A stretch of DNA of 64,000 nt, taken from positions 62,001 through 126,000 of the IMG/VR virus record IMGVR_UViG_3300017971_000190, one strand, 5' to 3'. Within the stretch, counting starts at the first letter, position 1; the number at the start of each line of letters is the position of its first letter. This document shows, piece by piece, positions 167 to 62,066 of the stretch. The translations under genes were made by a program, and so were the position numbers. A model generated the notes under the pieces. The model ran no database searches, had not been told where the DNA came from, and saw only the letters and a list, made by a program, of their open reading frames with translations.

Positions 167-254
167 CAAACACAGTTTAATTACCCTTTCTTTTTTCTTT
201 AGCTCCCTTTTGTAAAACTAATTTGTTGGTCAATTAAAGTAGGAGAAGACCCAT

Positions 255-5782: not shown

Positions 5783-6804
5783 CAACCATTAAAGTAGGAA
5801 AATACAATGTAGATGTGGCCAACTTTAATTGTAATAGTGAGTTAGAGTGTTTTCAACTTGGTTTTGATAAAGGAACATTTGTACAAGGTCGTGGCTATGT
5901 AAAATACCACAAGAAAGAAAAACCGGTGTGCCAGACTCGGCACATTCACGGTTGCCCTCGTGTTGGTGTTTGTCTCGATTGCAGAAGTGTAATTAGTCCC
6001 AGTACAGCTTTAGCTGGAATTTGTTCTTGGTGTAGAGGTACAAATATTCAGTTAGACGAAAAGGATGCTACTAGTAATGATACCATTAAATGAATATGGT
6101 TATAAAAAAGGAATACTTTACGCTGACTGGGGCTGTCCTACTTGTCGTAAAGTTGTCTACCAAAATACTACTGAAGACGCTTTTAGTAAAGAGCGTATCT
6201 GTCACAGTTGTCAAAAAGCGAATAAAGAAGCCGAAAGACGATCTAAACATCTTTGGGAATTAGCCCAAACTGAACGTCCTCCCATTAGGTACAAAAACGG
6301 TATTTATGGAATTAGAGATGATCTATTTTCTTACTTGATTGGAATGTCTACTCCAGTTATAGATAGAAACTTACAAAGGCTTTACGCAAAGTCAGATCTT
6401 CAAATTCCTCAAAGGATTATCCCTACGCATCATAAAGAGTTTTAAAAATGAAACGGTTAACCAGAAAAATAGTTCATGAAGAATTGCTCCATTTTAACTT
6501 ATTTACTGTAACTCCGACTATTAGAGGATTTGATTTAGGCTATGGGCAAGACGGGTTTACAAGACTTCTAACAGGTGGTGGAATAGCTGGTAATGGTTAC
6601 AAGTGGTGGCTGTGCACTATTGGTGGAGTAACGCTTGCTGGCCCGCTTGTAACCAAAAAGCAGCTACAACGCTGTTTAAGGGAACACTTAGCTGGTTATT
6701 GTAATCGACCACAAGATCAATCTGGTTGGAGAACGTATGCCAGACTAAATAAAAATAAAAACGGAGAACATTACATTTGGGTGCAAAGCAGGATACCACA
6801 ATGA
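5761..6804 (+). other. hypothetical CDSs 5761..6093, 6065..6445 and 6448..6804
   Basis: Overlapping co-directional ORFs; the first two carry CxxC pairs. Confidence 0.6.
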
Positions 6805-7715
6805 CAACTAGCAGAGTTTTAAAATTAGCCAGACAAAAGTTAATCACTCCCCCACCATTCGTAGCCGGATCTATTCAGTACGAAGTAATTATGGGAAGTG
6901 AAGCATATGGAGTCTCTTCTGGAGATAGCGATAGAGACGTATACGGTTTTTGTGTCCCACCAAAGTCTATAGTATTTCCTCACACAGTTGGAGATATTCT
7001 AGGATTTGGACGACAGAAAAAACGATTTGAACAATATCAGCAACATCATGTTTATGACAAAGATGCTTTAGGTGGTAAAGGCGTTGAATATGATTTTTCT
7101 ATTTATAATATTGTAAAATATTTTAGTCTTTGTATGGAAAACAATCCGAATATGATCGACTCTCTTTTCGTTCCACAACGTTGTATTCTTTATATTACTA
7201 AAATTGGTCAAATGGTTAGAGAGAAAAGACAGTTGTTTCTTCATAAAGGTGCTTGGTTCAAATTTAAAGGTTATAGTTACAGCCAAATCAAAAAGATGAA
7301 AATTAAGAATCCGGAACCAGGAAGTAAAAGATATGAGAATATTAAAAAATTTGGTTTCGATGTAAAATTTGCTTATCATGTGGTACGTCTTCTTAATGAA
7401 GTTGAGGAGATTTTAGTAGAACAACATCTTACATTGGATAGAAATAGAGAACAATTAAAAGCAATTCGACGTGGAGAGTGGACTTTAGAACAAGTTGAAG
7501 ATTATTTCAATAAAAAAGAAGCAGAGCTTGAAACTGCTTATACTGAAAGTAAATTACAACACAGTCCAAATGAAGAAGTTATTAAAAATTTACTTCTCTC
7601 TTGTTTAGAAGAGTACTATGGTAATTTAGAAAACTGTGTTGAAATTCCCAATGCTGAGAAAGAGGCATTAAGAGAGATTGATAGAACTCTTGAAAAAGTA
7701 AGACACTGCTTATAG
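6801..7715 (+). CDS. DNA polymerase beta superfamily nucleotidyltransferase (RlaP/YcgL-like)
   Basis: GSEAYG...DSDRD signature (hG[GS]x9-13Dh[DE]), NNPN.ID.LF and helical C-terminus FDVKFAYHVVRLL; ATG 6801 overlaps the upstream stop. Confidence 0.85.
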   Translation: MTTSRVLKLARQKLITPPPFVAGSIQYEVIMGSEAYGVSSGDSDRDVYGFCVPPKSIVFPHTVGDILGFGRQKKRFEQYQQHHVYDKDALGGKGVEYDFSIYNIVKYFSLCMENNPNMIDSLFVPQRCILYITKIGQMVREKRQLFLHKGAWFKFKGYSYSQIKKMKIKNPEPGSKRYENIKKFGFDVKFAYHVVRLLNEVEEILVEQHLTLDRNREQLKAIRRGEWTLEQVEDYFNKKEAELETAYTESKLQHSPNEEVIKNLLLSCLEEYYGNLENCVEIPNAEKEALREIDRTLEKVRHCL

Positions 7716-27678: not shown

Positions 27679-28326
27679 ATGTCACAAACCAAAACAAAAT
27701 ACCCCAGGACGTTACACCTTCCTTGGTCCCCGGGAAGAAGTAGGGATGATTTGGTTCTCACTTCCACCTCTCATTTTGAGGGGCAACAAGTTGTAATTAC
27801 TGAAAAAAGAGATGGTGAGAATACCACCATTTATCCTTTCACCGTACACGCTCGTTCTCTAGACTCCGCTTATCATCCTTCCCAAAGTTGGGTACGACAA
27901 CTTCAAGCTCAAATTGGTCACGAAATTCCAGCTGGCTGGAGAATCTGTGGGGAGAACCTTTATGCCGAGCACAGTATTCCCTACCACGTCACCAATTATT
28001 TTGAAGTGTTCTCTATTTGGGATGAAACTAACACGGCTCTAAGCTGGAATGCTACTCAGGAATGGGCAGATCTCTTAAATCTTCTGACAGTTCCTGTTTT
28101 GTTCCAAGGGGAATGGCCCGGAAAAGAGTTTCTAGATGAGCTGTGGCAACATTATTGTCAGAAAATGGATCCTGCCTTGGTTGAAGGATACGTTGTACGG
28201 TTAGCAGGACGTTTTTCTTACGATTCTTTCTCGGCTTCGGTGGCCAAATTTGTTCGTCCCGATCACGTACAAACTGACGAGCACTGGAAAAAGAATTGGA
28301 AGCCTAACCAACTCGTCCAGTCTTGA
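27679..28326 (+). CDS. ATP-dependent RNA ligase family protein
   Basis: KYPRTLHLPWSPG, TEKRDGEN (motif I KxDG), ICGENLYA.HSI, EGYVVR and KFVR..HV motifs. Confidence 0.85.
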   Translation: MSQTKTKYPRTLHLPWSPGRSRDDLVLTSTSHFEGQQVVITEKRDGENTTIYPFTVHARSLDSAYHPSQSWVRQLQAQIGHEIPAGWRICGENLYAEHSIPYHVTNYFEVFSIWDETNTALSWNATQEWADLLNLLTVPVLFQGEWPGKEFLDELWQHYCQKMDPALVEGYVVRLAGRFSYDSFSASVAKFVRPDHVQTDEHWKKNWKPNQLVQS

Positions 28327-28430
28327 CCCCTCCTTTGTAAAACCTTCCTAGACCGCGAGTTGATTTAACTCGCCCAGACCGAAGTTCGTAGAGCGATCGA
28401 AAGACCGAAAAACAAAAGGAGAAGTGTCTC

Positions 28431-32856: not shown

Positions 32857-35800
32857 GTGTCTTCCCTTCCCAAAACTTACGGTCGTTTTTGGCTTAAAGA
32901 TTCTACTTGGCATGTGGCTTGTGAACCACATGTCATGATTAGATTAAAGCGTACTTTTGACAAAGTACGAAAAGACCAGTACGATGTAATTACTCTAGCA
33001 GACTCTCCAGAAACCTGCCGTGAACTTCTTTGGTTCACCCTTCGTTTTCCTCTCACTGCTATTGATGAACCCACCCAATTTTACCTGGAAGAGCAAGCTG
33101 AAAAACATGAAAGGGAGGAGAAGGAAGTACACCTGCTACTGAGCGGTGAGGTGGAACCCAAAAACTTTAAACTTCGTTTGCCTCTTCGCCCATACCAACG
33201 TATTGCCACCGATTTAGCTCTTAAAACAGGAGGATTATTAATTGCTGACGATCTCGGAACTGGAAAGACTGCTTGTATTATTGGTATGTTTACAGATCAA
33301 CGTACCAGACCAGCTTTAGTTGCTACTCTTGCACATCTCACTTATCAGTGGCAAGCTGAAATAAATCGCTTCGCTCCTGAACTTACCACTCACATAATTA
33401 AGCAGGGAAAGTTTTACCAATTTTCTAAAGACAACATTTTTCCAGATGTTCTTATAACTAGTTATTACAAGTTGCATAGTTGGGCTGAGCATTTAGCTGG
33501 AAAAATTCGTTGTGTAGCCTTTGATGAAATACAAGAACTAAGACATGGAGAAATGAGTTTAAAAGGTTCAGCATCTTTTCATATTTCTGATCAAGCATCT
33601 TTCAGAGTCGGCGCTAGCGCTACTCCATTTTATAATTACGGCGCTGAAATGTTTAATATTATGAAAGCCCTTCGTCCTGGAGTACTAGGGACTTTCTCAG
33701 AATTTGCTAGGGAGTGGCTCAGCTGGGATGGTAAAAAACTAAAAGATCCCAAAGCATTTGGAACCTATCTTCGCGATCATGGTTATATGATTCGTAGAAC
33801 CAGAGAAGATATTAGGAGAACTATTCCCACCCTTACTAAAGTTCCACATTGGATTGATTTTGATTTTGAAGCTCTCGACGCTTTAAAATCATCGGCAGAT
33901 GAATTGGCTCTTTCTATTGTTCGATATGATCCAACTATTGATGAAGAGACACAAAAAGACAAATTCGCTAGAGAAAATGAATTCAAGCAACTTTTACGAC
34001 AAGCAACTGGAATTGGAAAAGCTCCCTATGTTGCAGAATTTGTCCGCATGCTTGTGGAAACTGGTGAACAAGTAGTTGTATTTTTGTGGCACCGCGAATG
34101 TTATTCGATACTAAAAGATCGTCTTAGTGATTATAAACCATCTATGTATACAGGTTCGGAAAGTCCACAACGAAAAAGAAAACAGTTTAATCGTTTCGTG
34201 AGAAAAGAAACTCCAATATTGTTAATTTCTCTCCGCTCAGGCGCTGGACTAGACGGTCTTCAATATCATTGCCGCACTGTCGTTTTTGGAGAATTAGATT
34301 GGTCCCCCGGAGTTATGGAGCAATGCTTAACAATGGAAACAGAAATTTTAACTAAAAAAGGATTTTGCAAAGAAAATGAAGTAGAAGTTGGAGATGAAGT
34401 AGCCGCTTTTGATATAAAAGATAGTAGTATTAAATGGAAGCCAGTTCTGCATAAAGTTTGTAGAAAGTTAGGTAAAAAAGAAAAACTTTTTTACACAGAG
34501 ACGAAAAAAATGGCTTTTAAAGTTACTGGAGATCATAGACTTATTGTGCGGCGTAGTAGACGCACAATTTCAGGAGAAAATAGGTCTGATTGGAAATTTA
34601 AATTAGCAAAGGACGTAGCTGGTAAAAATAGACGATTTGTTCCTACGTGTGGTTTGGAAAAAACTATAGGTGTTGATCTCACAAGTTATGAATTAAGGTT
34701 TTTAGGGTGGTATATTTCTGACGGAAGTTTTAATGGTAATCAAGTAACCATTTACCAAGCTGCTCATCAACCTTGGAATGATGATATTGTAGAAGTTTTA
34801 AATGGTTGTGAATTTACTTGGTATAGATATGAAAGGATTAATACCAACGGTAATTTGTTATATATGTATTGTGTACCAAAAGGGAACGTACAACGTTGGA
34901 CTAAAAATGAAATAAGTACATTCATAAAAATGAAGAAAAAAGGAGTTTCTTATAAAGAAATAGAGGAAAAAATTAATAGACCTAGAAGTAGTCTTTATAA
35001 AAGGTGGGCAAAATTTAAATCGGGTTACAAATATGAATTGATTCCTCCCAAAAATCGAACTACTAAGGGTTGGGAATATTTAGAAAAATATTTAGACAAA
35101 AATTTAAGTCCACTTCTAGAAAACGTTACTCGTGAACAACTAATAAATATTATTCACGGACTTTATATGGGGGATGGTACTAAAAATGAAAGTCGTGAAA
35201 ATGTGGTAATGATTGGCGGTACTAACAAAATTCTTTTCGATCGTCTGCAATCATTATGTGTAAGACGTGGGATGTCTGCTACTATATCTACACACAAAAA
35301 ACCAAAAGATCCGAATAGAAAAATCTCACATACTATTTATATATCTAAATTTGAAGATGCTTACATACCCGGTCCTAATAAACCTAATGTATTGTCAGAA
35401 GTGGAACCAACAAAAAATGAGAAAGTTTGGTGTGTTACAAATGAATTAGGAACATTGGTTACCAGGTATAATGGTAAAGTTGCTGTAGTTGGAAATTGTA
35501 TAGGTCGGGTACATAGAGACGGACAACTAGATGACGTAACAGCTTACTTTTTGTTAGCCAATGGGGGAAGTGATCCTTACGTTTCAGAACTGTTAGGAAT
35601 TAAAAGAGCCCAAATAGAAGGCGTCAAAGATCCAGAAGGTGCCGTTCTTCCCAATTACGATTTAGATAACGTTTCTGTAAAAGAACTAGCGCTTAACTAC
35701 ATGAACCAACGACAAGAAGGAAAGGCGGTAGAAGTCATGCCAACAAACAGAAAAAATTTAGAAACTTATCCTTTGGAAAGTGAAGAGAGTAACATTAAAG

Positions 35801-36042
35801 CCTACTTAACGGACGAAATTAAAATTGAGTTGTCTGAAGGTTTAGCCAATTTTACAAAGGAGAATGATCTGCTAGATCTTATTGACAAAGAACTACTAAC
35901 AGGTTTCTTAAATTCCCTTGGTTTAAAACCCTCTAAAAAGCTGCATAAAAAATTGGTTAAAAATTTGTGCCTGTCTCTTTTAGAAGCTGCTTGTAGAGCG
36001 ACTATCAATGATCGAAAAGTAATTAAAACACATGACTTGTAG
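32857..36042 (+). CDS. SNF2-family helicase/ATPase, intein-containing
   Basis: LIADDLGTGKT (motif I), FDEIQELR (II), SATP (III), GAGLDGLQ (V) and Q/CIGRVHRDGQ (VI, split by the intein). Confidence 0.92.
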   Translation: MSSLPKTYGRFWLKDSTWHVACEPHVMIRLKRTFDKVRKDQYDVITLADSPETCRELLWFTLRFPLTAIDEPTQFYLEEQAEKHEREEKEVHLLLSGEVEPKNFKLRLPLRPYQRIATDLALKTGGLLIADDLGTGKTACIIGMFTDQRTRPALVATLAHLTYQWQAEINRFAPELTTHIIKQGKFYQFSKDNIFPDVLITSYYKLHSWAEHLAGKIRCVAFDEIQELRHGEMSLKGSASFHISDQASFRVGASATPFYNYGAEMFNIMKALRPGVLGTFSEFAREWLSWDGKKLKDPKAFGTYLRDHGYMIRRTREDIRRTIPTLTKVPHWIDFDFEALDALKSSADELALSIVRYDPTIDEETQKDKFARENEFKQLLRQATGIGKAPYVAEFVRMLVETGEQVVVFLWHRECYSILKDRLSDYKPSMYTGSESPQRKRKQFNRFVRKETPILLISLRSGAGLDGLQYHCRTVVFGELDWSPGVMEQCLTMETEILTKKGFCKENEVEVGDEVAAFDIKDSSIKWKPVLHKVCRKLGKKEKLFYTETKKMAFKVTGDHRLIVRRSRRTISGENRSDWKFKLAKDVAGKNRRFVPTCGLEKTIGVDLTSYELRFLGWYISDGSFNGNQVTIYQAAHQPWNDDIVEVLNGCEFTWYRYERINTNGNLLYMYCVPKGNVQRWTKNEISTFIKMKKKGVSYKEIEEKINRPRSSLYKRWAKFKSGYKYELIPPKNRTTKGWEYLEKYLDKNLSPLLENVTREQLINIIHGLYMGDGTKNESRENVVMIGGTNKILFDRLQSLCVRRGMSATISTHKKPKDPNRKISHTIYISKFEDAYIPGPNKPNVLSEVEPTKNEKVWCVTNELGTLVTRYNGKVAVVGNCIGRVHRDGQLDDVTAYFLLANGGSDPYVSELLGIKRAQIEGVKDPEGAVLPNYDLDNVSVKELALNYMNQRQEGKAVEVMPTNRKNLETYPLESEESNIKAYLTDEIKIELSEGLANFTKENDLLDLIDKELLTGFLNSLGLKPSKKLHKKLVKNLCLSLLEAACRATINDRKVIKTHDL
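34324..35496 (+). mobile_element. intein with LAGLIDADG homing endonuclease (391 aa)
   Basis: Starts CLTMETEILT (block A), has VTGDHR (block B), FLGWYISDG and HGLYMGDG (LAGLIDADG), and VWCVTNELGTLVTRYNGKVAVVGN followed by +1 Cys. Confidence 0.92.
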
Positions 36043-49556: not shown

Positions 49557-50053
49557 ATGCGAGGAAGTAAAAGACTAGCTCAAGCTATGGCCAGAGGAAA
49601 AGTAGTAGTACGAAACATCACGGCTGGAGAGGTTAACCTTCAGCTGCTTTCAGATGATAATCAACAAATTACTATCATTATCGGTCCCTATGCAGATGAA
49701 GAGATTGCTCCCAAATACGTGAGCATTAAAGGTCTTACACGATCTCGTAATTTAGAAAAGAACCTAGGACAGAAGTCTCGTAAGCTTCAAGTTTTATAAA
49801 AATGTCTGATAATTACACAGGTATTTATGTAGGTGGGTGTGCTAGAACGTTTTTATTCTCAGAAGAAAAAGGTCAGTTAGGATTGTTTTGTAGTCCAGAT
49901 TGCACAGGGGCAATTCGTAAATCAAATGGAGAAGAAACTGGTTATCGTATTGACTTTGTTGGAAGAGTCTATTTTCAAAGGGAATTAACTGATTTTCATT
50001 TTTGTAATGGACGTCTTTATGGCCCATCAAAAGCATTACCAGGAATAATATAA
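49557..50053 (+). other. two small hypothetical CDSs (49557..49799, 49802..50053)
   Basis: AAGGAAG RBS; they close the + strand tail transcription unit. Confidence 0.6.
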
Positions 50054-50197
50054 AAATACTAAAATTTAGTTTTACTCTTTAATCCATTCCCATCCACCTT
50101 TTTTGACTTTGTTGTTATTTTTCATTACACTCAACCATCTGTTAACCATTCTGGTTGTAACGTAAGGATGCCCATTACATTGAATTAATTTAGCCAA

Positions 50198-50524
50198 TTA
50201 CATTGAATTTAAAGGGTGTTCGGAATTACTTAAGATAGCTTCTGCTGTTTTGGTCCACTTTTTGCCGTCATCAAAAAGATCTCGTAATTCCTTTGTAGTT
50301 AGATTTTCACTTTTCATATGTTTAAAACGAATAACCTTTATTCTATTATCGATAGTAGTTAGCTTTTGAGTTAGTTCAGCCACCCCAATTCTTCTTTCTT
50401 CTTCCAATGCCTTCCTTTTATTAAGTAAAAAATCAAGTCTGCTAAGTAGTTCTTCAGCACTTTTCCGTTTCATAATATCTTCCCCTTCTAATATTATAGC
50501 ATAATATACGATATTAAACCTCAT
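50198..50524 (-). CDS. hypothetical coiled-coil protein (likely start 50473)
   Basis: Only long ORF in this gap; GAAGGGGAAG RBS-like sequence before MKRKS. Confidence 0.6.
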   Translation of the reverse strand: MRFNIVYYAIILEGEDIMKRKSAEELLSRLDFLLNKRKALEEERRIGVAELTQKLTTIDNRIKVIRFKHMKSENLTTKELRDLFDDGKKWTKTAEAILSNSEHPLNSM

Positions 50525-50606
50525 GCCAAGTGTTTAAATAAGTCTGAAGTTTAAGGGGGATAACATGTTGTAATTATTTAAGTTTTACATTTTTGGAGTA
50601 AAGTAC

Positions 50607-50635
50607 TTGACAAATGCGCTGTCGGCAGGTAGACT
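50607..50635 (+). promoter_or_regulatory. sigma70-type promoter overlapping an inverted repeat
   Basis: TTGACA (50607-50612), 17 nt, TAGACT (50630-50635). Confidence 0.6.
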
Positions 50636-50677
50636 TCTTATTGTCTTACGGTAGTTTGTCTACCTGCCGACGAGCGC
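50616..50677. repeat. long inverted repeat (14 bp perfect plus 5 bp beyond a bulge)
   Basis: GTCGGCAGGTAGAC (50621-50634) and GTCTACCTGCCGAC (50658-50671), flanked by GCGCT/AGCGC. Confidence 0.9.
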
Positions 50678-50697
50678 TACAACAGGGTGCTCACCAC

Positions 50698-50739
50698 GGG
50701 CCATCGAGGATGCCGGTAACACTCTCGATGGCCCTTTTT
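50698..50739 (+). terminator. intrinsic terminator-like hairpin
   Basis: GGGCCATCGAG/CTCGATGGCCC 11-bp stem followed by TTTTT. Confidence 0.8.
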
Positions 50740-50768
50740 ATATCTCCACTTTGTAAAACCTCACTATC

Positions 50769-51338
50769 ATGCCACAACACATTTGTTTTATTCACCAAAG
50801 TAACGGCCCCATTGACGTTGTCTTTCTCCACGAGCACCACAGAACCCCCAGAGCTTTTGGAGGTACCGACGATGAAGACAACCTAATTTGGTTGTGTGTA
50901 CCTTGTCACGATTTACTACACCGTACTGCTGTCATGTCCATGCATGGTAAGCGTGGTTTAGTAGATGATGTCATTGATCAGTATCTTCCGGGGGATTTAA
51001 ACGCCCAACAAAAATTTAAAACTCTGCTTCATGAGGTAATTCAAGCTAAGACCGCCTTCATGGAAAAAGCAGAAGACCCTGAAGACACTGTACTCATGAA
51101 TCTTAAAATACCCAAACAAGTTCATAGTGTACTTAAAACATGCTCCATGGATCATCAACATCCTAATGGAAGAAATATGGGGTTGTACGCCTTCACTACT
51201 AAAATACTCACACAATTTGCTTTGAATCAGCTTTTTGGAGAATCCTCAGCTCCTCCCCCTCCCGGCTCTGGTGTTCAGGCACCTCCGTCTACTTTGAAAA
51301 AAGAAGCTGTTATGGCTGACTTGGTTAAATTTAAATAA
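50769..51338 (+). CDS. HNH endonuclease domain fused to a putative ribbon-helix-helix domain
   Basis: HEHHRTPRAFGG.D..DNLIWLCVPCHDLLH (HNH); C-terminal LMNLKIPKQVHSVLK...LYAFTTKILTQF has an RHH-like strand-helix-helix pattern. Confidence 0.7.
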   Translation: MPQHICFIHQSNGPIDVVFLHEHHRTPRAFGGTDDEDNLIWLCVPCHDLLHRTAVMSMHGKRGLVDDVIDQYLPGDLNAQQKFKTLLHEVIQAKTAFMEKAEDPEDTVLMNLKIPKQVHSVLKTCSMDHQHPNGRNMGLYAFTTKILTQFALNQLFGESSAPPPPGSGVQAPPSTLKKEAVMADLVKFK

Positions 51339-51498: not shown

Positions 51499-51858
51499 AT
51501 GGCATCGTTAGATTATAGATCGGTCAGCATTCGAATAGGAGTACCTTGTCTAACCCGTATAGATCAATACTGCCAAAATCCAGCTAACAGAGTCGAAAAT
51601 CGTTCCGAATTTATGGGGTTTTGTGCAGCTCGTCAGGCTAGTCGTATTCTAGCTGGTAAAGTTCCTTCTTATGTAGATCTTAGAACAGCGTCTACAACAG
51701 AAGACGAGACTACTACCATAACTATTAGTTTGATTGAGAGACGAGCAGACTTAATTGAACAAGCATGCCGACGTACCAGACATGTTTTTAGTCTCTTTAT
51801 TATTTGGGCAACTATGGCAGAGTTGGATAAAATAGAAGAGACAGAAGCGGTAGCTTAG
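51499..51858 (+). CDS. putative tandem ribbon-helix-helix DNA-binding protein
   Basis: Two units: RSVSIRI...LTRIDQYC...RSEFMGFCA and TTITISL...ADLIEQAC...FSLFIIWA. Confidence 0.55.
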   Translation: MASLDYRSVSIRIGVPCLTRIDQYCQNPANRVENRSEFMGFCAARQASRILAGKVPSYVDLRTASTTEDETTTITISLIERRADLIEQACRRTRHVFSLFIIWATMAELDKIEETEAVA

Positions 51859-52276
51859 ACGTGAAAAATCTCACATAGATTGGAAATTTCTAATCGTCTC
51901 CAATCTGCTTCTGTTTCAGCAGCTTCTTCGTACCCGTTTTTTAACCCTTCAATTTCTCCCACGTCAGGGAAGCAATCAAGCTCTTTTGGCAGTTCCTCCA
52001 GTTTGTGGAGCACAGTCTCGTCATCGTAAAACATGGTTTTTGTCCCTTTTAGAGTTGTAGTATCCATTGGTCAATTATGACTACATTACCATTATGTATA
52101 ACTAATTTGTAATCCCCACCTAAAAGATCTGGGTTTTCATGCTTAAACTTAGCAATTAAGTATTCCGCTGTCATCTGTGATAAAGAACCCAGTTCTAATG
52201 TACCCTCCTTTACTCCAAATACAGAGCTGGTAGCCGTCCAGGTCAACGTAACCGGTGTTTTTCTAGTGTTGTGCAA
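51855..52276 (-). other. two small hypothetical CDSs (52049..52276, 51855..52067)
   Basis: Minus-strand pair with a GAAGGA RBS, downstream of a minus-strand TTGACA at 52345-52350. Confidence 0.6.
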
Positions 52277-54404: not shown

Positions 54405-54439
54405 ACCTTCTTTTCTCTCCTTCCACTTTGTAAAAACTG

Positions 54440-60622: not shown

Positions 60623-61257
60623 AGAGTTGCATCATGATAATTCCACTCAAAGATAAACACATAAAGAAAAACTATGAAAATCTCTGTGAAGACCAAATTA
60701 TTCTCAGTGCAGCTCGCTCTATACCAGAAAATATGAAAGCAGAATTGTTAAACAATAAAGAACAATTTCTTAGAGGTGTACTAGCTGGTCTCATTAAAAG
60801 CATGTCTTTGTTGGAGAAAATTGCTAACCTTTTGACGCAAGGAAAAACTTTAGAAGCTTTACAACTCAAAGCTGGATTGGGAGCAATCATGTTATTGGTT
60901 TGTCAAAAACTGGTTGGCGAAAAAGAACTGCCGGAATTGAAACGTATAGAAGTACCAGAAAAGAAAATAATTGTGCCGTGAGGTGATGTTGTGGATTGTT
61001 CTATTTGCGGTAGTAAACTGAAAGCTGGTTGGACTCCTTGTGAAGCTACCCCAATTCCTGATAGTTTTAAAACAACTGCGGAATTTAAATTTTGGAGTGG
61101 ACAAGTAAAACCACTTATACCAATTTTTCTTTGTCCTCACGGTTGCTACACCACTATCCCCATTACTACTAAGAAAGAACTGCAACAGTGGGTTGAAGAC
61201 GTAGTTTTAGAAAATAGAGAAGAAACCCCAAAAAAATTTGAAAGGAACGTATTATGA
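60586..61257 (+). other. hypothetical CDSs 60586..60981 and 60991..61257
   Basis: Co-directional ORFs. Confidence 0.55.
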
Positions 61258-62066
61258 ACATATCTCATTTTCATTGCACCACTCTATCTGATTCGTGGTA
61301 CCAACTTGTGTTTAACCTTATGCGGAATGACGACGTACCAAAAAATGTGTATCAAATACAAAAAGGTTCATATGTAGGGCAAAAGCGATTAGAATATGAA
61401 TTTGTAATTGTTCAAATTGATCACCCCGGAGAGATGCCTCTTATTCCAGAAATTCCGCCACACCTTAATATTCCACCTCCTGTGGAAAGTATGGATTATG
61501 TTGAAGAGTATTTTGCTAATTATCTTATGAACCCAGAGTTAGAACGTAATGAGACCTACCGTTACAGCTCGTGGTTAGAGCCTGGTGTCCGTCGCGTTAT
61601 TGAACAACTTAAAGGTGTACCAGGTAATAATCAAGCAGCTATTAGTATTGGAGGGTGGTCTCCATCAGCAAACTTTCACTATAATTCAAAAGAAACTTCA
61701 GAAGGAATTGGTCGGTTTACCGATACCGATAACTTCATTGATCCTGGTACCGGACAAAGGGATCCCGCTTGTCTAAGAGTCTGTGATTTCAGACTTGACC
61801 AAAATAATACTCTTCATATGTTTGTATATTTTCGCAGTTGGGATCTTGGATCTGGGTATAGCGCAAACCTAGCTGGTCTCCAAATGTTGAAATCTTATGT
61901 GGCTCAGGAAATAGGAGCCAAGGATGGTAAAATAATTGCAGCTTCTAAGGGTTTGCACATTTACGATCACTACATACAAGTTGCAGCAGTTCGTTTAGGG
62001 ATGGAAAATGTAGATAGTATGGATAATTTTCTCGATTATATCGAAAGTGAGAAAATAGATAAATAG
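61254..62066 (+). CDS. thyA: thymidylate synthase family protein (dUMP-type, Asn specificity residue)
   Basis: DPACLR (catalytic Cys), YFRSWDL.SG..AN and KGLHIY; N-terminal GSYVGQKRLEYE...PEIPPHL resembles deltaproteobacterial ThyA as I recall it. Confidence 0.85.
   Translation: MNISHFHCTTLSDSWYQLVFNLMRNDDVPKNVYQIQKGSYVGQKRLEYEFVIVQIDHPGEMPLIPEIPPHLNIPPPVESMDYVEEYFANYLMNPELERNETYRYSSWLEPGVRRVIEQLKGVPGNNQAAISIGGWSPSANFHYNSKETSEGIGRFTDTDNFIDPGTGQRDPACLRVCDFRLDQNNTLHMFVYFRSWDLGSGYSANLAGLQMLKSYVAQEIGAKDGKIIAASKGLHIYDHYIQVAAVRLGMENVDSMDNFLDYIESEKIDK

What the first reader, a model, noticed from the sequence alone, without database searches (positions are those of the whole stretch)
50607..50739. 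Promoter locked inside a 19-bp inverted repeat, followed 60 nt later by a terminator
The left arm of the repeat contains the spacer and -10 of TTGACA-N17-TAGACT. A transcript starting near 50642 would carry the right arm, complementary to its own promoter's non-template strand, and would stop at the 50698-50739 terminator, giving an RNA of about 95 nt. Alternatively a readthrough transcript folds both hairpins, or the DNA extrudes a cruciform. This resembles antisense or replicon-control elements and lies 1.8 kb from parB.
Basis: partly seen in the sequence, partly recalled or inferred. Interest (0 to 1): 0.6.

Follow-up and report, generated by a model that had tools for sequence, protein, structure and literature searches.

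The report
Candidate small RNA gene in jumbo phage
A short promoter-hairpin-terminator unit in an uncultured jumbo phage most likely makes a non-coding RNA of about 100 nt, a kind of unit already known from other phages; it is absent from the nearest relatives, and no RNA data exist to show that it is transcribed.

Summary
The anatomy is real and not chance. TTGACA-N17-TAGACT lies at 50607-50635. A 19-bp inverted repeat with one bulged G (50616-50634 / 50658-50677) covers the spacer and -10. A strong intrinsic terminator follows at 50698-50739. The window is part of a 222-kb, roughly 63% complete jumbo-phage contig from sediment and seawater metagenomes.

The promoter belongs to a class, TTGACA-N17-TAnnnT, that is strongly enriched between genes: 7 of 10 genome copies, p=1.5e-6. 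The terminator is the strongest of only three intergenic plus-strand terminators in the 120-kb plus-strand gene block. A second such terminator also follows a promoter of this class.

Best reading: a self-contained early unit giving a non-coding RNA of about 97-100 nt. It sits in a variable accessory island just upstream of an HNH endonuclease gene. Short RNAs ended by promoter-proximal terminators are documented in phiKZ and other phages.

Not supported: a replicon-control or origin role, or a link to parB. The ParB is the phage nuclease-like type, and the GC-skew extremum lies elsewhere. The nearest relatives lack the element entirely. No Rfam family matches. No RNA runs exist, so transcription is untested and the role of the repeat is inferred only.

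The parts
50607..50635 (+). Sigma-70-type promoter: -35 TTGACA (50607-50612), 17-nt spacer, -10 TAGACT (50630-50635). Predicted start about 50640-50643.
   Evidence: 10 of 12. It belongs to the class TTGACA-N17-TAnnnT, of which 7 of 10 genome copies are intergenic and on the plus strand (p=1.5e-6). It lacks the TG or TGTG that most class members have before the -10.
50616..50634 (.). Left arm of the inverted repeat (GCGCTGTCGGCAGGTAGAC). It covers the promoter spacer and the first 5 bases of the -10, and lies upstream of the predicted start.
50658..50677 (.). Right arm of the inverted repeat (GTCTACCTGCCGAC-G-AGCGC, with G50672 bulged). It lies inside the predicted transcript.
50638..50654 (+). 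Inner 7-bp stem with three G-U pairs and a CUU loop, inside the 23-nt loop of the repeat. It can form only as plus-strand RNA and only in transcripts that carry both arms.
   Evidence: It is weaker or absent as DNA and on the minus strand. There is no covariation data, so it may be fortuitous.
50640..50739 (+). Predicted non-coding RNA of about 97-100 nt. It folds into two small 5' hairpins (50650-50664 and 50672-50692) plus the terminator hairpin.
   Evidence: -42.6 kcal/mol, z = -4.6, terminator intact, no antiterminator alternative. No ORF with a ribosome-binding site. No Rfam match at E<=1 or at gathering score. No tRNA.
50698..50739 (+). Intrinsic terminator: 12-pair GC-rich stem (50698-50709 / 50723-50734) followed by T5. 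It works in one direction only, because there is no A-run upstream.
   Evidence: dG -22.6. It is the strongest of three intergenic plus-strand terminators in the 120-kb plus-strand gene block. The simple scan missed it because the loop exceeds 8 nt.
50744..50759 (+). Motif CTCC-N4-TGTAAAAC, 10 nt before the HNH start codon. Possibly a second, phage-specific promoter class.
   Evidence: TGTAAAA is enriched 3.6-fold upstream of genes. A similar motif sits upstream of the HNH gene in relative L004 (L004 361-377).
50582..50598 (-). The same motif (CTCCAAAAATGTAAAAC) on the minus strand, pointing at the minus-strand gene. Together with the plus copy it brackets the unit.
   Evidence: (I3).
50493..50529 (-). 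Divergent sigma-70-type promoter of the minus-strand gene: TTGGCA-17-TATTAT, overlapping TGcTATAAT.
50198..50473 (-). Minus-strand gene of 91 aa from the ATG with the GAAGGGG ribosome-binding site (108 aa from the upstream ATG). Predicted helical, with no known family and no relatives found.
   Evidence: (only itself among 5.8 billion proteins in a word-indexed search).
50769..51338 (+). HNH endonuclease gene of 189 aa with no Shine-Dalgarno sequence. Homology with relatives begins exactly at its ATG.
49800..50768 (.). Variable accessory island: the 83-aa gene, the minus-strand gene and the RNA unit. It is absent or replaced in the nearest relatives.

Best explanation
The element is a self-contained early transcription unit of an uncultured jumbo phage.

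Host RNA polymerase with its primary sigma factor starts at the TTGACA-N17-TAGACT promoter, near 50640-50643. It stops at the strong intrinsic terminator at 50735-50739. The product is a non-coding RNA of about 97-100 nt. This part is inferred from sequence and has not been shown experimentally.

The unit sits in a variable accessory island, back to back with an orphan minus-strand gene that has its own promoter. It lies just upstream of an HNH endonuclease gene that appears to have its own promoter-like motif after the terminator.

A promoter-initiated RNA lacks the left arm of the repeat. Its 5' 35-40 nt, which include the right arm, are therefore only weakly folded. That region could act as an antisense segment.

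The only perfect complement in the phage is the left arm. The left arm would be present in RNA only in plus-strand transcripts that run in from the upstream operon. No terminator was found between that operon and this site.

My inferred mechanism is as follows. Read-through transcripts fold the 19-bp hairpin in cis, or pair with the small RNA in trans. This gives roughly two turns of double-stranded RNA, long enough to be a possible RNase III substrate. They are then ended at the same terminator. The hairpin and terminator would thus also insulate the downstream genes.

The role of the repeat is the weakest step in this account.
For: - The anatomy and its improbability by chance are established.
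- Promoter class: TTGACA-N17-TAnnnT occurs 10 times in the genome. Seven copies are intergenic, all co-oriented with the plus-strand gene block (p=1.5e-6; sequences). TTGACA alone is enriched between genes (17 of 119, p=0.009).
- Intrinsic terminators are rare. There are three intergenic plus-strand ones in the 120-kb plus block, and this is the strongest.
- A second of those three (genome 127536) also lies about 200 nt after a promoter of the same class (genome 127336). The structured RNA between them has no Rfam match. The phage therefore appears to have at least two promoter-RNA-terminator units.
- The promoter-initiated RNA keeps the terminator intact and offers no antiterminator fold.
- There is no credible ORF in the unit.
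- HNH has a recurrent upstream motif (CTCC..TGTAAAAC) after the terminator. The motif is also present upstream of HNH in relative L004.
- No sigma-70 region 2, RNAP beta or RNase III family was found in the 222-kb record. This is consistent with use of host polymerase at such promoters.
- Precedent: short RNAs (<250 nt) made by terminators immediately downstream of promoters were mapped and confirmed by Northern blot in phiKZ and other virulent phages (PMC10914365).
Against: - There is no expression evidence. Only two DNA metagenomes hold the phage and no RNA run does.
- There is no conservation and no covariation. Copies from other samples are identical here: 1 difference in 8.5 kb, outside the unit.
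- The nearest relatives of the flanking HNH gene lack the unit.
- The metagenome scan for the repeat core found only this record plus unrelated hairpins.
- The promoter lacks the TG or TGTG element that most class members have before the -10.
- No target was found in the translation-initiation regions of phage genes beyond what shuffled RNAs give.
- The proposed role of the repeat requires plus-strand read-through antisense to the minus-strand gene. That read-through is inferred only from the absence of a predicted terminator.
Confidence: 0.45

Rival explanations
1. The unit is the 5' leader of the HNH endonuclease gene. The promoter serves HNH. The terminator normally aborts transcription, which keeps a potentially toxic nuclease low, and is read through only under some condition or with a phage factor. 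The short RNA is then a by-product.
For: - The terminator ends 30 nt before the HNH ATG.
- No other sigma-70-type promoter lies between it and HNH.
- Premature termination in 5'UTRs is common in phages, with some read-through into the genes (PMC10914365).
Against: - No alternative antiterminator structure is predicted.
- HNH has no Shine-Dalgarno sequence.
- HNH is preceded by its own recurrent motif after the terminator, and the motif is also upstream of HNH in L004.
- Relatives express HNH without this leader.
Confidence: 0.18
2. The hairpin and terminator are simply the 3' end of the long upstream plus-strand operon. They form a double hairpin that stops and stabilises read-through RNA. The promoter-like match inside the left arm is inactive or incidental.
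For: - No terminator is predicted between the end of the upstream genes (50053) and this site.
- This is one of only three plus-strand terminators, so it probably marks a major unit boundary.
- The promoter lacks the class's TG element.
Against: - Such transcripts would have to run antisense through the minus-strand gene.
- The exact TTGACA-N17-TAnnnT pattern is otherwise almost confined to intergenic, co-oriented positions.
- The other operon terminators are single hairpins.
Confidence: 0.15
3. The repeat acts as DNA. It is either an operator for a dimeric or tetrameric repressor that shuts off the promoter, possibly the divergently encoded minus-strand protein. Or it is a cruciform extruded under the negative supercoiling produced by the divergent promoters, which locks the -10.
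For: - The left arm covers the spacer and -10.
- The arrangement, a divergent gene plus a repeat over the promoter, is classic for regulator-target pairs (established knowledge, for example oxyR/oxyS and gcvA/gcvB).
- The arm centres are about 43 bp apart, roughly four helical turns.
- All 19 pairs are Watson-Crick, so the DNA hairpin is stable (-22 kcal/mol, z = -8.2).
Against: - Arms of 19 bp with a 23-bp spacer are far longer than protein half-sites.
- The spacer is unfavourably long for cruciform extrusion (established knowledge).
- The minus-strand protein has no recognisable DNA-binding domain.
- There is no second copy of the site anywhere in the genome.
Confidence: 0.1
4. The repeat has no function. 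It is a recent palindromic duplication, for example from a template switch, in a fast-turnover accessory island next to a homing-type endonuclease gene. It sits by accident beside a real promoter and terminator.
For: - The arms are perfect, which fits a young repeat.
- The island is lineage-specific and the flanking protein has no relatives.
- There is no conservation.
Against: - Apart from the loop-containing hairpin at genome 191714-191753, it is the only strong hairpin in 222 kb that is not an evident terminator.
- Two independent samples carry it unchanged, though they are near-clonal.
Confidence: 0.08
5. It is a replicon-control or origin element. A short RNA would prime or regulate replication, through an R-loop at its own promoter or by acting as an antisense regulator linked to the nearby parB.
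For: The RNA's right arm is complementary to the non-template strand of its own promoter. A ParB-family gene lies 1.8 kb away.
Against: - No overlapping opposite-strand transcript, rep gene, iterons or AT-rich unwinding element. The 100 bp containing the unit is 52% GC, against about 30% in the flanks.
- The cumulative GC-skew extremum is at genome 126-127 kb, not here.
- The ParB resembles the ParB-like nuclease-domain proteins of Gordonia phages, and no ParA was detected among the neighbouring ORFs that were scanned.
- The unit is absent from relatives that keep the downstream genes, including ParB.
Confidence: 0.03

Closest known systems
Promoter-proximal-terminator short RNAs of virulent and jumbo phages (for example the ~71-nt RNA from phiKZ P112/T102 and the 141-nt RNA from TU237; PMC10914365)
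   Same: A promoter is followed within about 60-200 nt by an intrinsic terminator, just upstream of a gene, giving an abundant short non-coding RNA. Both occur in jumbo-phage genomes, and the function is unknown in both.
   Different: The phiKZ RNAs were mapped experimentally and are conserved within their genera. This one is predicted only and is absent from its nearest relatives. None of them is described with the promoter's spacer and -10 forming one arm of a long inverted repeat with the transcribed region. phiKZ uses its own RNA polymerases, whereas this promoter is of the host sigma-70 type.
Lambda oop RNA (77 nt) and the lambda PR'-tR' 6S RNA (from my own knowledge, not checked here)
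   Same: Short phage RNAs are made from a sigma-70 promoter and ended by a strong intrinsic terminator. For PR'-tR', the terminator separates the promoter from downstream genes.
   Different: oop is antisense to cII, and no overlapping opposite-strand gene exists here. PR'-tR' needs a Q antiterminator and its binding site, and no such factor was identified. Neither promoter is embedded in a repeat.
P4 CI RNA and P1/P7 c4 RNA (from my own knowledge, not checked here)
   Same: A small phage RNA whose complement lies elsewhere in the same transcription unit, so that the RNA acts on read-through or nascent transcripts of its own region.
   Different: Those RNAs are processed from longer transcripts and control immunity or antirepressor operons of temperate elements. 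Here the RNA would have its own promoter, the complement lies upstream of that promoter, and no immunity genes are present.
Plasmid copy-control antisense RNAs (ColE1 RNA I, R1 CopA, pT181 RNAI) (from my own knowledge, not checked here)
   Same: A short, highly structured RNA with its own promoter and terminator.
   Different: Those RNAs are transcribed opposite to, and overlap, the primer or the rep mRNA leader next to an origin or rep gene. None of that is present here.
Hairpin-dependent promoters: F plasmid Frpo/ssi single-strand promoters and phage N4 virion-RNAP promoters (from my own knowledge, not checked here)
   Same: Promoter sequence lies inside an inverted repeat.
   Different: In Frpo, both the -35 and the -10 are rebuilt within the stem of single-stranded DNA. 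Here the -35 lies outside the repeat. N4 promoters are 5-7-bp stems with 3-nt loops read by a phage polymerase. Here the stem is 19 bp and the loop 23 nt.

Membership tests
Sigma-70 (primary sigma) promoter | A -35 TTGACA-like hexamer and a -10 TATAAT-like hexamer spaced 16-18 nt, with A at position 2 and T at position 6 of the -10 | tested here: met
   TTGACA-17-TAGACT, 10 of 12. The class TTGACA-N17-TAnnnT is intergenic in 7 of 10 cases.
Sigma-70 (primary sigma) promoter | A transcription start 5-9 nt downstream of the -10, observed experimentally | not testable with these tools
   No RNA runs hold this phage.
Intrinsic (Rho-independent) terminator | A GC-rich hairpin directly followed by a U-run | tested here: met
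   12-pair stem, dG -22.6, T5 directly after the stem.
Phage promoter-proximal-terminator small RNA (phiKZ type, PMC10914365) | A terminator within about 250 nt downstream of a promoter, with no ORF between them | tested here: met
   62 nt lie between the -10 and the terminator stem. There is no ORF with a ribosome-binding site.
Phage promoter-proximal-terminator small RNA (phiKZ type, PMC10914365) | A short RNA species detected, with sequence conserved among related phages | tested here: not met
   Detection cannot be tested. Conservation fails: relatives L004 and L005 and the P0003 and P0004 contigs lack the unit, and no diverged copy exists in metagenomes.
Any curated RNA family (Rfam 15), including HEARO/omega RNA, riboswitches, ribozymes, Y RNA-like and tRNA | A covariance-model match | tested here: not met
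   No match at E<=1 in 48-53 kb. None at gathering score in the whole window. No tRNA or tmRNA.
IscB/HEARO (HNH-associated guide RNA) | A large structured RNA next to a protein with RuvC and HNH domains | tested here: not met
   The neighbour is 189 aa and has only an N-terminal HNH motif. There is no HEARO hit.
Replicon-control antisense RNA (ColE1 RNA I / CopA type) | The RNA overlaps an oppositely transcribed primer or rep mRNA leader and lies next to a rep gene or origin | tested here: not met
   No minus-strand promoter or gene overlaps 50640-50739. No rep gene was identified among the neighbours scanned. The skew extremum is elsewhere.
Single-strand DNA promoter (Frpo/ssi) | Both the -35 and the -10 lie within the stem of the folded single strand | tested here: not met
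   The repeat begins at 50616, and the -35 (50607-50612) is outside it.
Transcription attenuator or riboswitch leader | Mutually exclusive terminator and antiterminator structures | tested here: not met
   The minimum-energy and centroid folds of the promoter-initiated RNA keep the terminator, and no competing helix was found. Factor-dependent antitermination cannot be tested.
parS / partition site | A short palindrome bound by ParB, with ParA-ParB genes adjacent | tested here: not met
   No ParA was detected among the neighbouring ORFs scanned. The ParB is the nuclease-like phage type, 1.8 kb away and separated by several genes. Binding cannot be tested.

The most novel reading that the evidence does not exclude
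This would be a self-complementary promoter. The first 35 nt of the transcript are the exact complement of the non-template strand of the promoter's own spacer and -10.

The nascent or accumulated RNA could therefore invade its promoter as an R-loop, or capture transcripts that enter from upstream. Either way it would switch the promoter off.

That would be an RNA-based autoregulatory or insulating device carried on a mobile phage island, possibly as part of an RNA-based anti-defence or exclusion module together with the orphan divergent gene.
Probability: 0.06. Interest if true: 0.7.

Novelty: new member of a known kind. Interest (0 to 1): 0.3.

Why it matters
If transcribed, this adds one more orphan small RNA to the growing list of phage-encoded non-coding RNAs whose functions are mostly unknown. 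It sits in a hypervariable island beside a homing-type endonuclease, the sort of place where accessory, exclusion or anti-defence functions tend to reside. The promoter-in-a-repeat design would interest specialists only if the repeat were shown to regulate the promoter or to process read-through RNA. As it stands this is a single-lineage, unconserved, unexpressed-as-far-as-known prediction in an uncultured phage with no known host, so its immediate value is low to moderate. The genome-wide by-products are more useful for annotating this phage: a clear host-type early promoter class, a second recurrent upstream motif, and a second promoter-RNA-terminator unit.

Tried and rejected
- **Known RNA families.** Rfam at E<=1 on 48-53 kb and at gathering score on the whole window gave nothing. 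ARAGORN found no tRNA or tmRNA.
- **Close DNA relatives.** Megablast of 3 kb against cultured phages gave no match. The repeat pattern in IMG/VR gave none.
- **Relatives through neighbouring proteins in IMG/VR.** None was found for HNH or for the minus-strand protein.
- **The 5.8-billion-protein search.** HNH has four relatives, and their contexts lack the unit. The minus-strand protein has none. That search is word-based and limited to 0.55-1.75 times the query length, so distant, longer or shorter kin are not excluded.
- **Metagenome scan for the repeat core with variable loop length.** It returned this phage's own record plus two unrelated hairpin families (L008/L009/L012, and L010). Their flanks share nothing with this element, so I judged them chance matches.
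- **Expression.** No RNA run holds the phage. Laying the two DNA holders and two sister runs gave one spanning contig each, with no variants or alternative junctions in 50-51 kb.
- **Population variation.** Copies from two samples differ at 1 of 8570 positions, outside the unit, so there is no covariation signal.
- **Target search.** blastn-short and RNAduplex of the RNA's 5' 58 nt against all phage translation-initiation regions gave nothing better than shuffled controls. The only long complement is the left arm itself.
- **Antiterminator search.** Folding the promoter-initiated RNA with and without the HNH start showed no antiterminator.
- **Origin idea.** GC skew and local composition gave no support.
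- **CRISPR-repeat mimic idea.** There is no array and no repeated copy in the 222-kb record. The host is unknown, so this was not tested further.
- **Minus-strand protein as regulator.** No Pfam or PHROG family matched, the Atlas model has low confidence, and no structural hit was found.
- **Phage-encoded factors.** No sigma factor, RNAP beta or RNase III was detected in this incomplete record.
- **Host or taxon through ParB and HNH against cultured phages.** Only distant ParB hits (about 30% identity) turned up, and none for HNH.

Full report
**What the window is.** The 64-kb window is bases 62001-126000 of a 221,679-bp IMG/VR virus record. The source is a JGI sediment metagenome, and CheckV puts completeness at about 63%. 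The same phage is near-identical in an ENA seawater assembly, and the HNH protein P0001 also occurs on a contig as long as 298 kb. It is an uncultured jumbo phage with 38% GC. Plus-strand genes run from about 10 to 127 kb, and minus-strand genes from 128 kb to the end. It has no close cultured relative.

**The observation.**
- The -35 TTGACA is at 50607-50612 and the -10 TAGACT at 50630-50635, with a 17-nt spacer.
- The left arm is 50616-50634 and the right arm 50658-50677. There are 14 perfect pairs, a bulged G at 50672, then 5 more pairs, and a 23-nt loop.
- The terminator stem is 50698-50734, followed by TTTTT.

The 146-nt stretch folds at -73 kcal/mol against -39 +/- 4 for shuffles (z = -8.6). 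The arm 14-mer pair is expected 0.07 times in the window. The whole 222-kb contig has only 15 perfect hairpins of 11 bp or more, and two of them are adjacent here.

**Is the promoter credible?** A 10/12 consensus match is weak on its own, because 82 such sites exist and most are inside genes. The stricter pattern TTGACA-N17-TAnnnT occurs 10 times in the genome. Seven are intergenic, against 0.76 expected (p = 1.5e-6), and all seven lie on the plus strand in the plus-strand gene block.

Most of these also carry CCTTGTGn or a TG just before the -10. That makes them a host-type early promoter class with an extended -10. The site at 50607 belongs to the class by -35, spacing and TAnnnT. It lacks the TG, because its spacer is occupied by the repeat arm. 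No sigma-70 region 2, RNAP beta or RNase III family was found in the record, which is incomplete. This is consistent with use of the host polymerase.

**Is the terminator special?** My scan for a hairpin followed by a T-run found only three intergenic plus-strand terminators in the 120-kb plus block, at genome 78741, 112698 and 127536. The one here is the strongest, at -22.6 kcal/mol.

The one at 127536 also lies about 200 nt downstream of a promoter of the same class (127336). A structured RNA with no Rfam match lies between them. Two of the three terminators therefore close short promoter-RNA-terminator units. This is the main internal argument that the present unit is a small-RNA gene and not a coincidence.

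**The predicted RNA.** From a start at 50640-50643 the RNA is 97-100 nt. It folds into two small hairpins plus an intact terminator (-42.6 kcal/mol, z = -4.6).
- Extending into HNH reveals no antiterminator.
- There is no ORF with a ribosome-binding site.
- There is no Rfam hit at E<=1 and no tRNA.
- The RNA contains only the right arm. Its sole long complement in the phage is the left arm.
- No phage translation-initiation region pairs with it better than with shuffled controls.

**Surroundings.**
- To the left, on the minus strand, lies a 91-aa gene (50198-50473; 108 aa from an upstream ATG). It has a good ribosome-binding site and its own promoter, TTGGCA-17-TATTAT/TGcTATAAT, at 50529-50493.
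- That protein has no Pfam or PHROG family, no relative in a 5.8-billion-protein word search, and a low-confidence Atlas model.
- To the right lies a 189-aa HNH endonuclease gene (50769-51338) without a Shine-Dalgarno sequence.
- A recurrent motif, CTCC-N3-6-TGTAAAA(C), sits 10 nt before the HNH ATG at 50744-50759. It also appears on the minus strand at 50598-50582, pointing at the minus-strand gene.
- The same motif precedes several other genes, and TGTAAAA is enriched 3.6-fold upstream of genes.
- A similar motif lies upstream of HNH in the relative L004.

I read this motif as a second promoter class, which is an inference. If that is right, HNH is transcribed from downstream of the terminator, and the terminator is not its attenuator.

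**Relatives.** HNH has four relatives at 56-83% identity.
- L004 aligns with this phage for 2.1 kb at 74% nucleotide identity, starting exactly at the HNH ATG. Everything upstream is unrelated and holds a different minus-strand gene. L004 has a 10-N scaffold gap in that spacer.
- Two further contigs have only 95-98 bp between a minus-strand gene and HNH, too short for the unit.
- In L005 a homologue of the 80-aa gene (49557-49799) directly abuts HNH.

So 49800-50768 is a variable accessory island, and the unit is not conserved. A metagenome scan for the repeat core returned only this record and unrelated hairpins. Copies from two samples are identical here. Laying the DNA runs showed no variants or alternative junctions. 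No RNA run exists.

**What it most likely is.** It is a self-contained early unit producing a non-coding RNA of about 100 nt. Short RNAs made by terminators immediately downstream of promoters have been mapped and confirmed by Northern blot in phiKZ and other virulent phages (PMC10914365). That makes this a new member of a known kind, and my confidence is 0.45.

**The role of the repeat.** This is unresolved. I favour an RNA-level role. No terminator is predicted between the upstream operon (ending at 50053) and this site. Read-through plus-strand RNA would carry both arms and fold a 19-bp stem, extended by a 7-bp G-U-containing inner stem that forms only in plus-strand RNA. It would then be stopped by the same terminator. 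The promoter-initiated RNA could pair with the same left arm in trans.

**Rivals.**

| Rival | Confidence |
|---|---|
| Leader or attenuator of HNH | 0.18 |
| Operon 3' end with an incidental promoter match | 0.15 |
| DNA-level operator or cruciform | 0.10 |
| Functionless recent palindrome | 0.08 |
| Replicon control or origin | 0.03 |

No transcript or gene overlaps on the opposite strand, and no rep gene was identified among the neighbours scanned. There are no iterons and no AT-rich unwinding element. The unit's 100 bp is 52% GC, against about 30% in the flanks. The GC-skew extremum is at the strand switch at 126-127 kb. The ParB is of the type annotated as a ParB-like nuclease-domain protein in Gordonia phages, and no ParA was detected among the neighbouring ORFs scanned. 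The -35 lies outside the repeat, so it does not match the Frpo-type single-strand promoter design.

**Verdict.** The structure is real and statistically striking. It is a plausible small-RNA gene of a known general kind. It is lineage-specific and unconserved, with no expression data and no identifiable target. Interest is 0.3. The most novel reading still open is a promoter silenced or insulated by its own complementary transcript, to which I give about 6%.

Noticed in passing
Genome-wide. In the window: 4741 (genome 66741), 50607 and 54440. Also genome 11248, 16507, 50068 and 127336.: The promoter class TTGACA-N17-TAnnnT, often with CCTTGTGn before the -10, occurs 10 times. Seven copies are intergenic and all seven lie on the plus strand (p=1.5e-6). 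These are probably the phage's host-dependent early promoters.
   Followed up: partly
Window 50744-50759 (+), 50598-50582 (-), about 54416-54433 (+), 28325-28342 (+) and 203-217 (+). Also genome 16110 and 177851 (-), and L004 361-377.: A recurrent motif, CTCC-N3-6-TGTAAAA(C), lies upstream of several genes. It is also present upstream of HNH in a related phage. It may be a second, phage-specific promoter class. In two cases, HNH among them, the ATG is only 7-10 nt downstream, which suggests leaderless mRNAs.
   Followed up: partly
L007 1336-1565 (genome 127336-127565, just outside the window): A second unit of the same design: a TTGACA-N17-TACGGT promoter, about 200 nt of structured RNA, and a strong terminator. 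It has no Rfam match. It lies next to tRNA-Arg and tRNA-Tyr genes and a weak YrlA-like (tRNA-like) hit.
   Followed up: partly
Window 50072-50208: The minus-strand gene ends at a TAA (50198-50200). This is followed in the same frame by 41 more codons (50197-50072). A 12-nt direct repeat, ATTACATTGAAT, sits at 50174-50185 and 50197-50208. Stop-codon usage (TAA 168, TGA 70, TAG 66) gives no sign of recoding, so I did not read it through.
   Followed up: partly
Window 32857-36042: The SNF2/DEAD-type helicase (1061 aa) carries a Hint module and a LAGLIDADG domain. This points to an intein with a homing endonuclease inside the helicase.
   Followed up: no
Window 50769 (HNH ATG), and L004 421: Homology between this phage and its nearest relative begins exactly at the HNH start codon. 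The region just upstream of this homing-type endonuclease gene differs in every relative seen, which makes it a recombination hot spot.
   Followed up: yes
Window 6777-7715 and 61254-62066: A protein of the RlaP family (RNA repair pathway, DNA polymerase beta family) and a divergent thymidylate synthase.
   Followed up: no
L006 (genome 1-12500): There are eight tRNA genes (Glu, Met, Leu, Ser, Pro, Gln, Val, Lys) in a GC-rich, gene-poor region. A 91-bp tandem repeat sits at the very start of the contig. Orphan TTGACA promoters at genome 9404 and 11248 face non-coding or minus-strand sequence.
   Followed up: no
Window 51369, 52480 (+) and 52350 (-): Further intergenic TTGACA sites lie between HNH and ParB, including one on the minus strand that drives two small minus-strand genes (51855-52276). 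Their transcripts would run antisense into the 119-aa gene and HNH. The region is a patchwork of short, independently promoted units.
   Followed up: no
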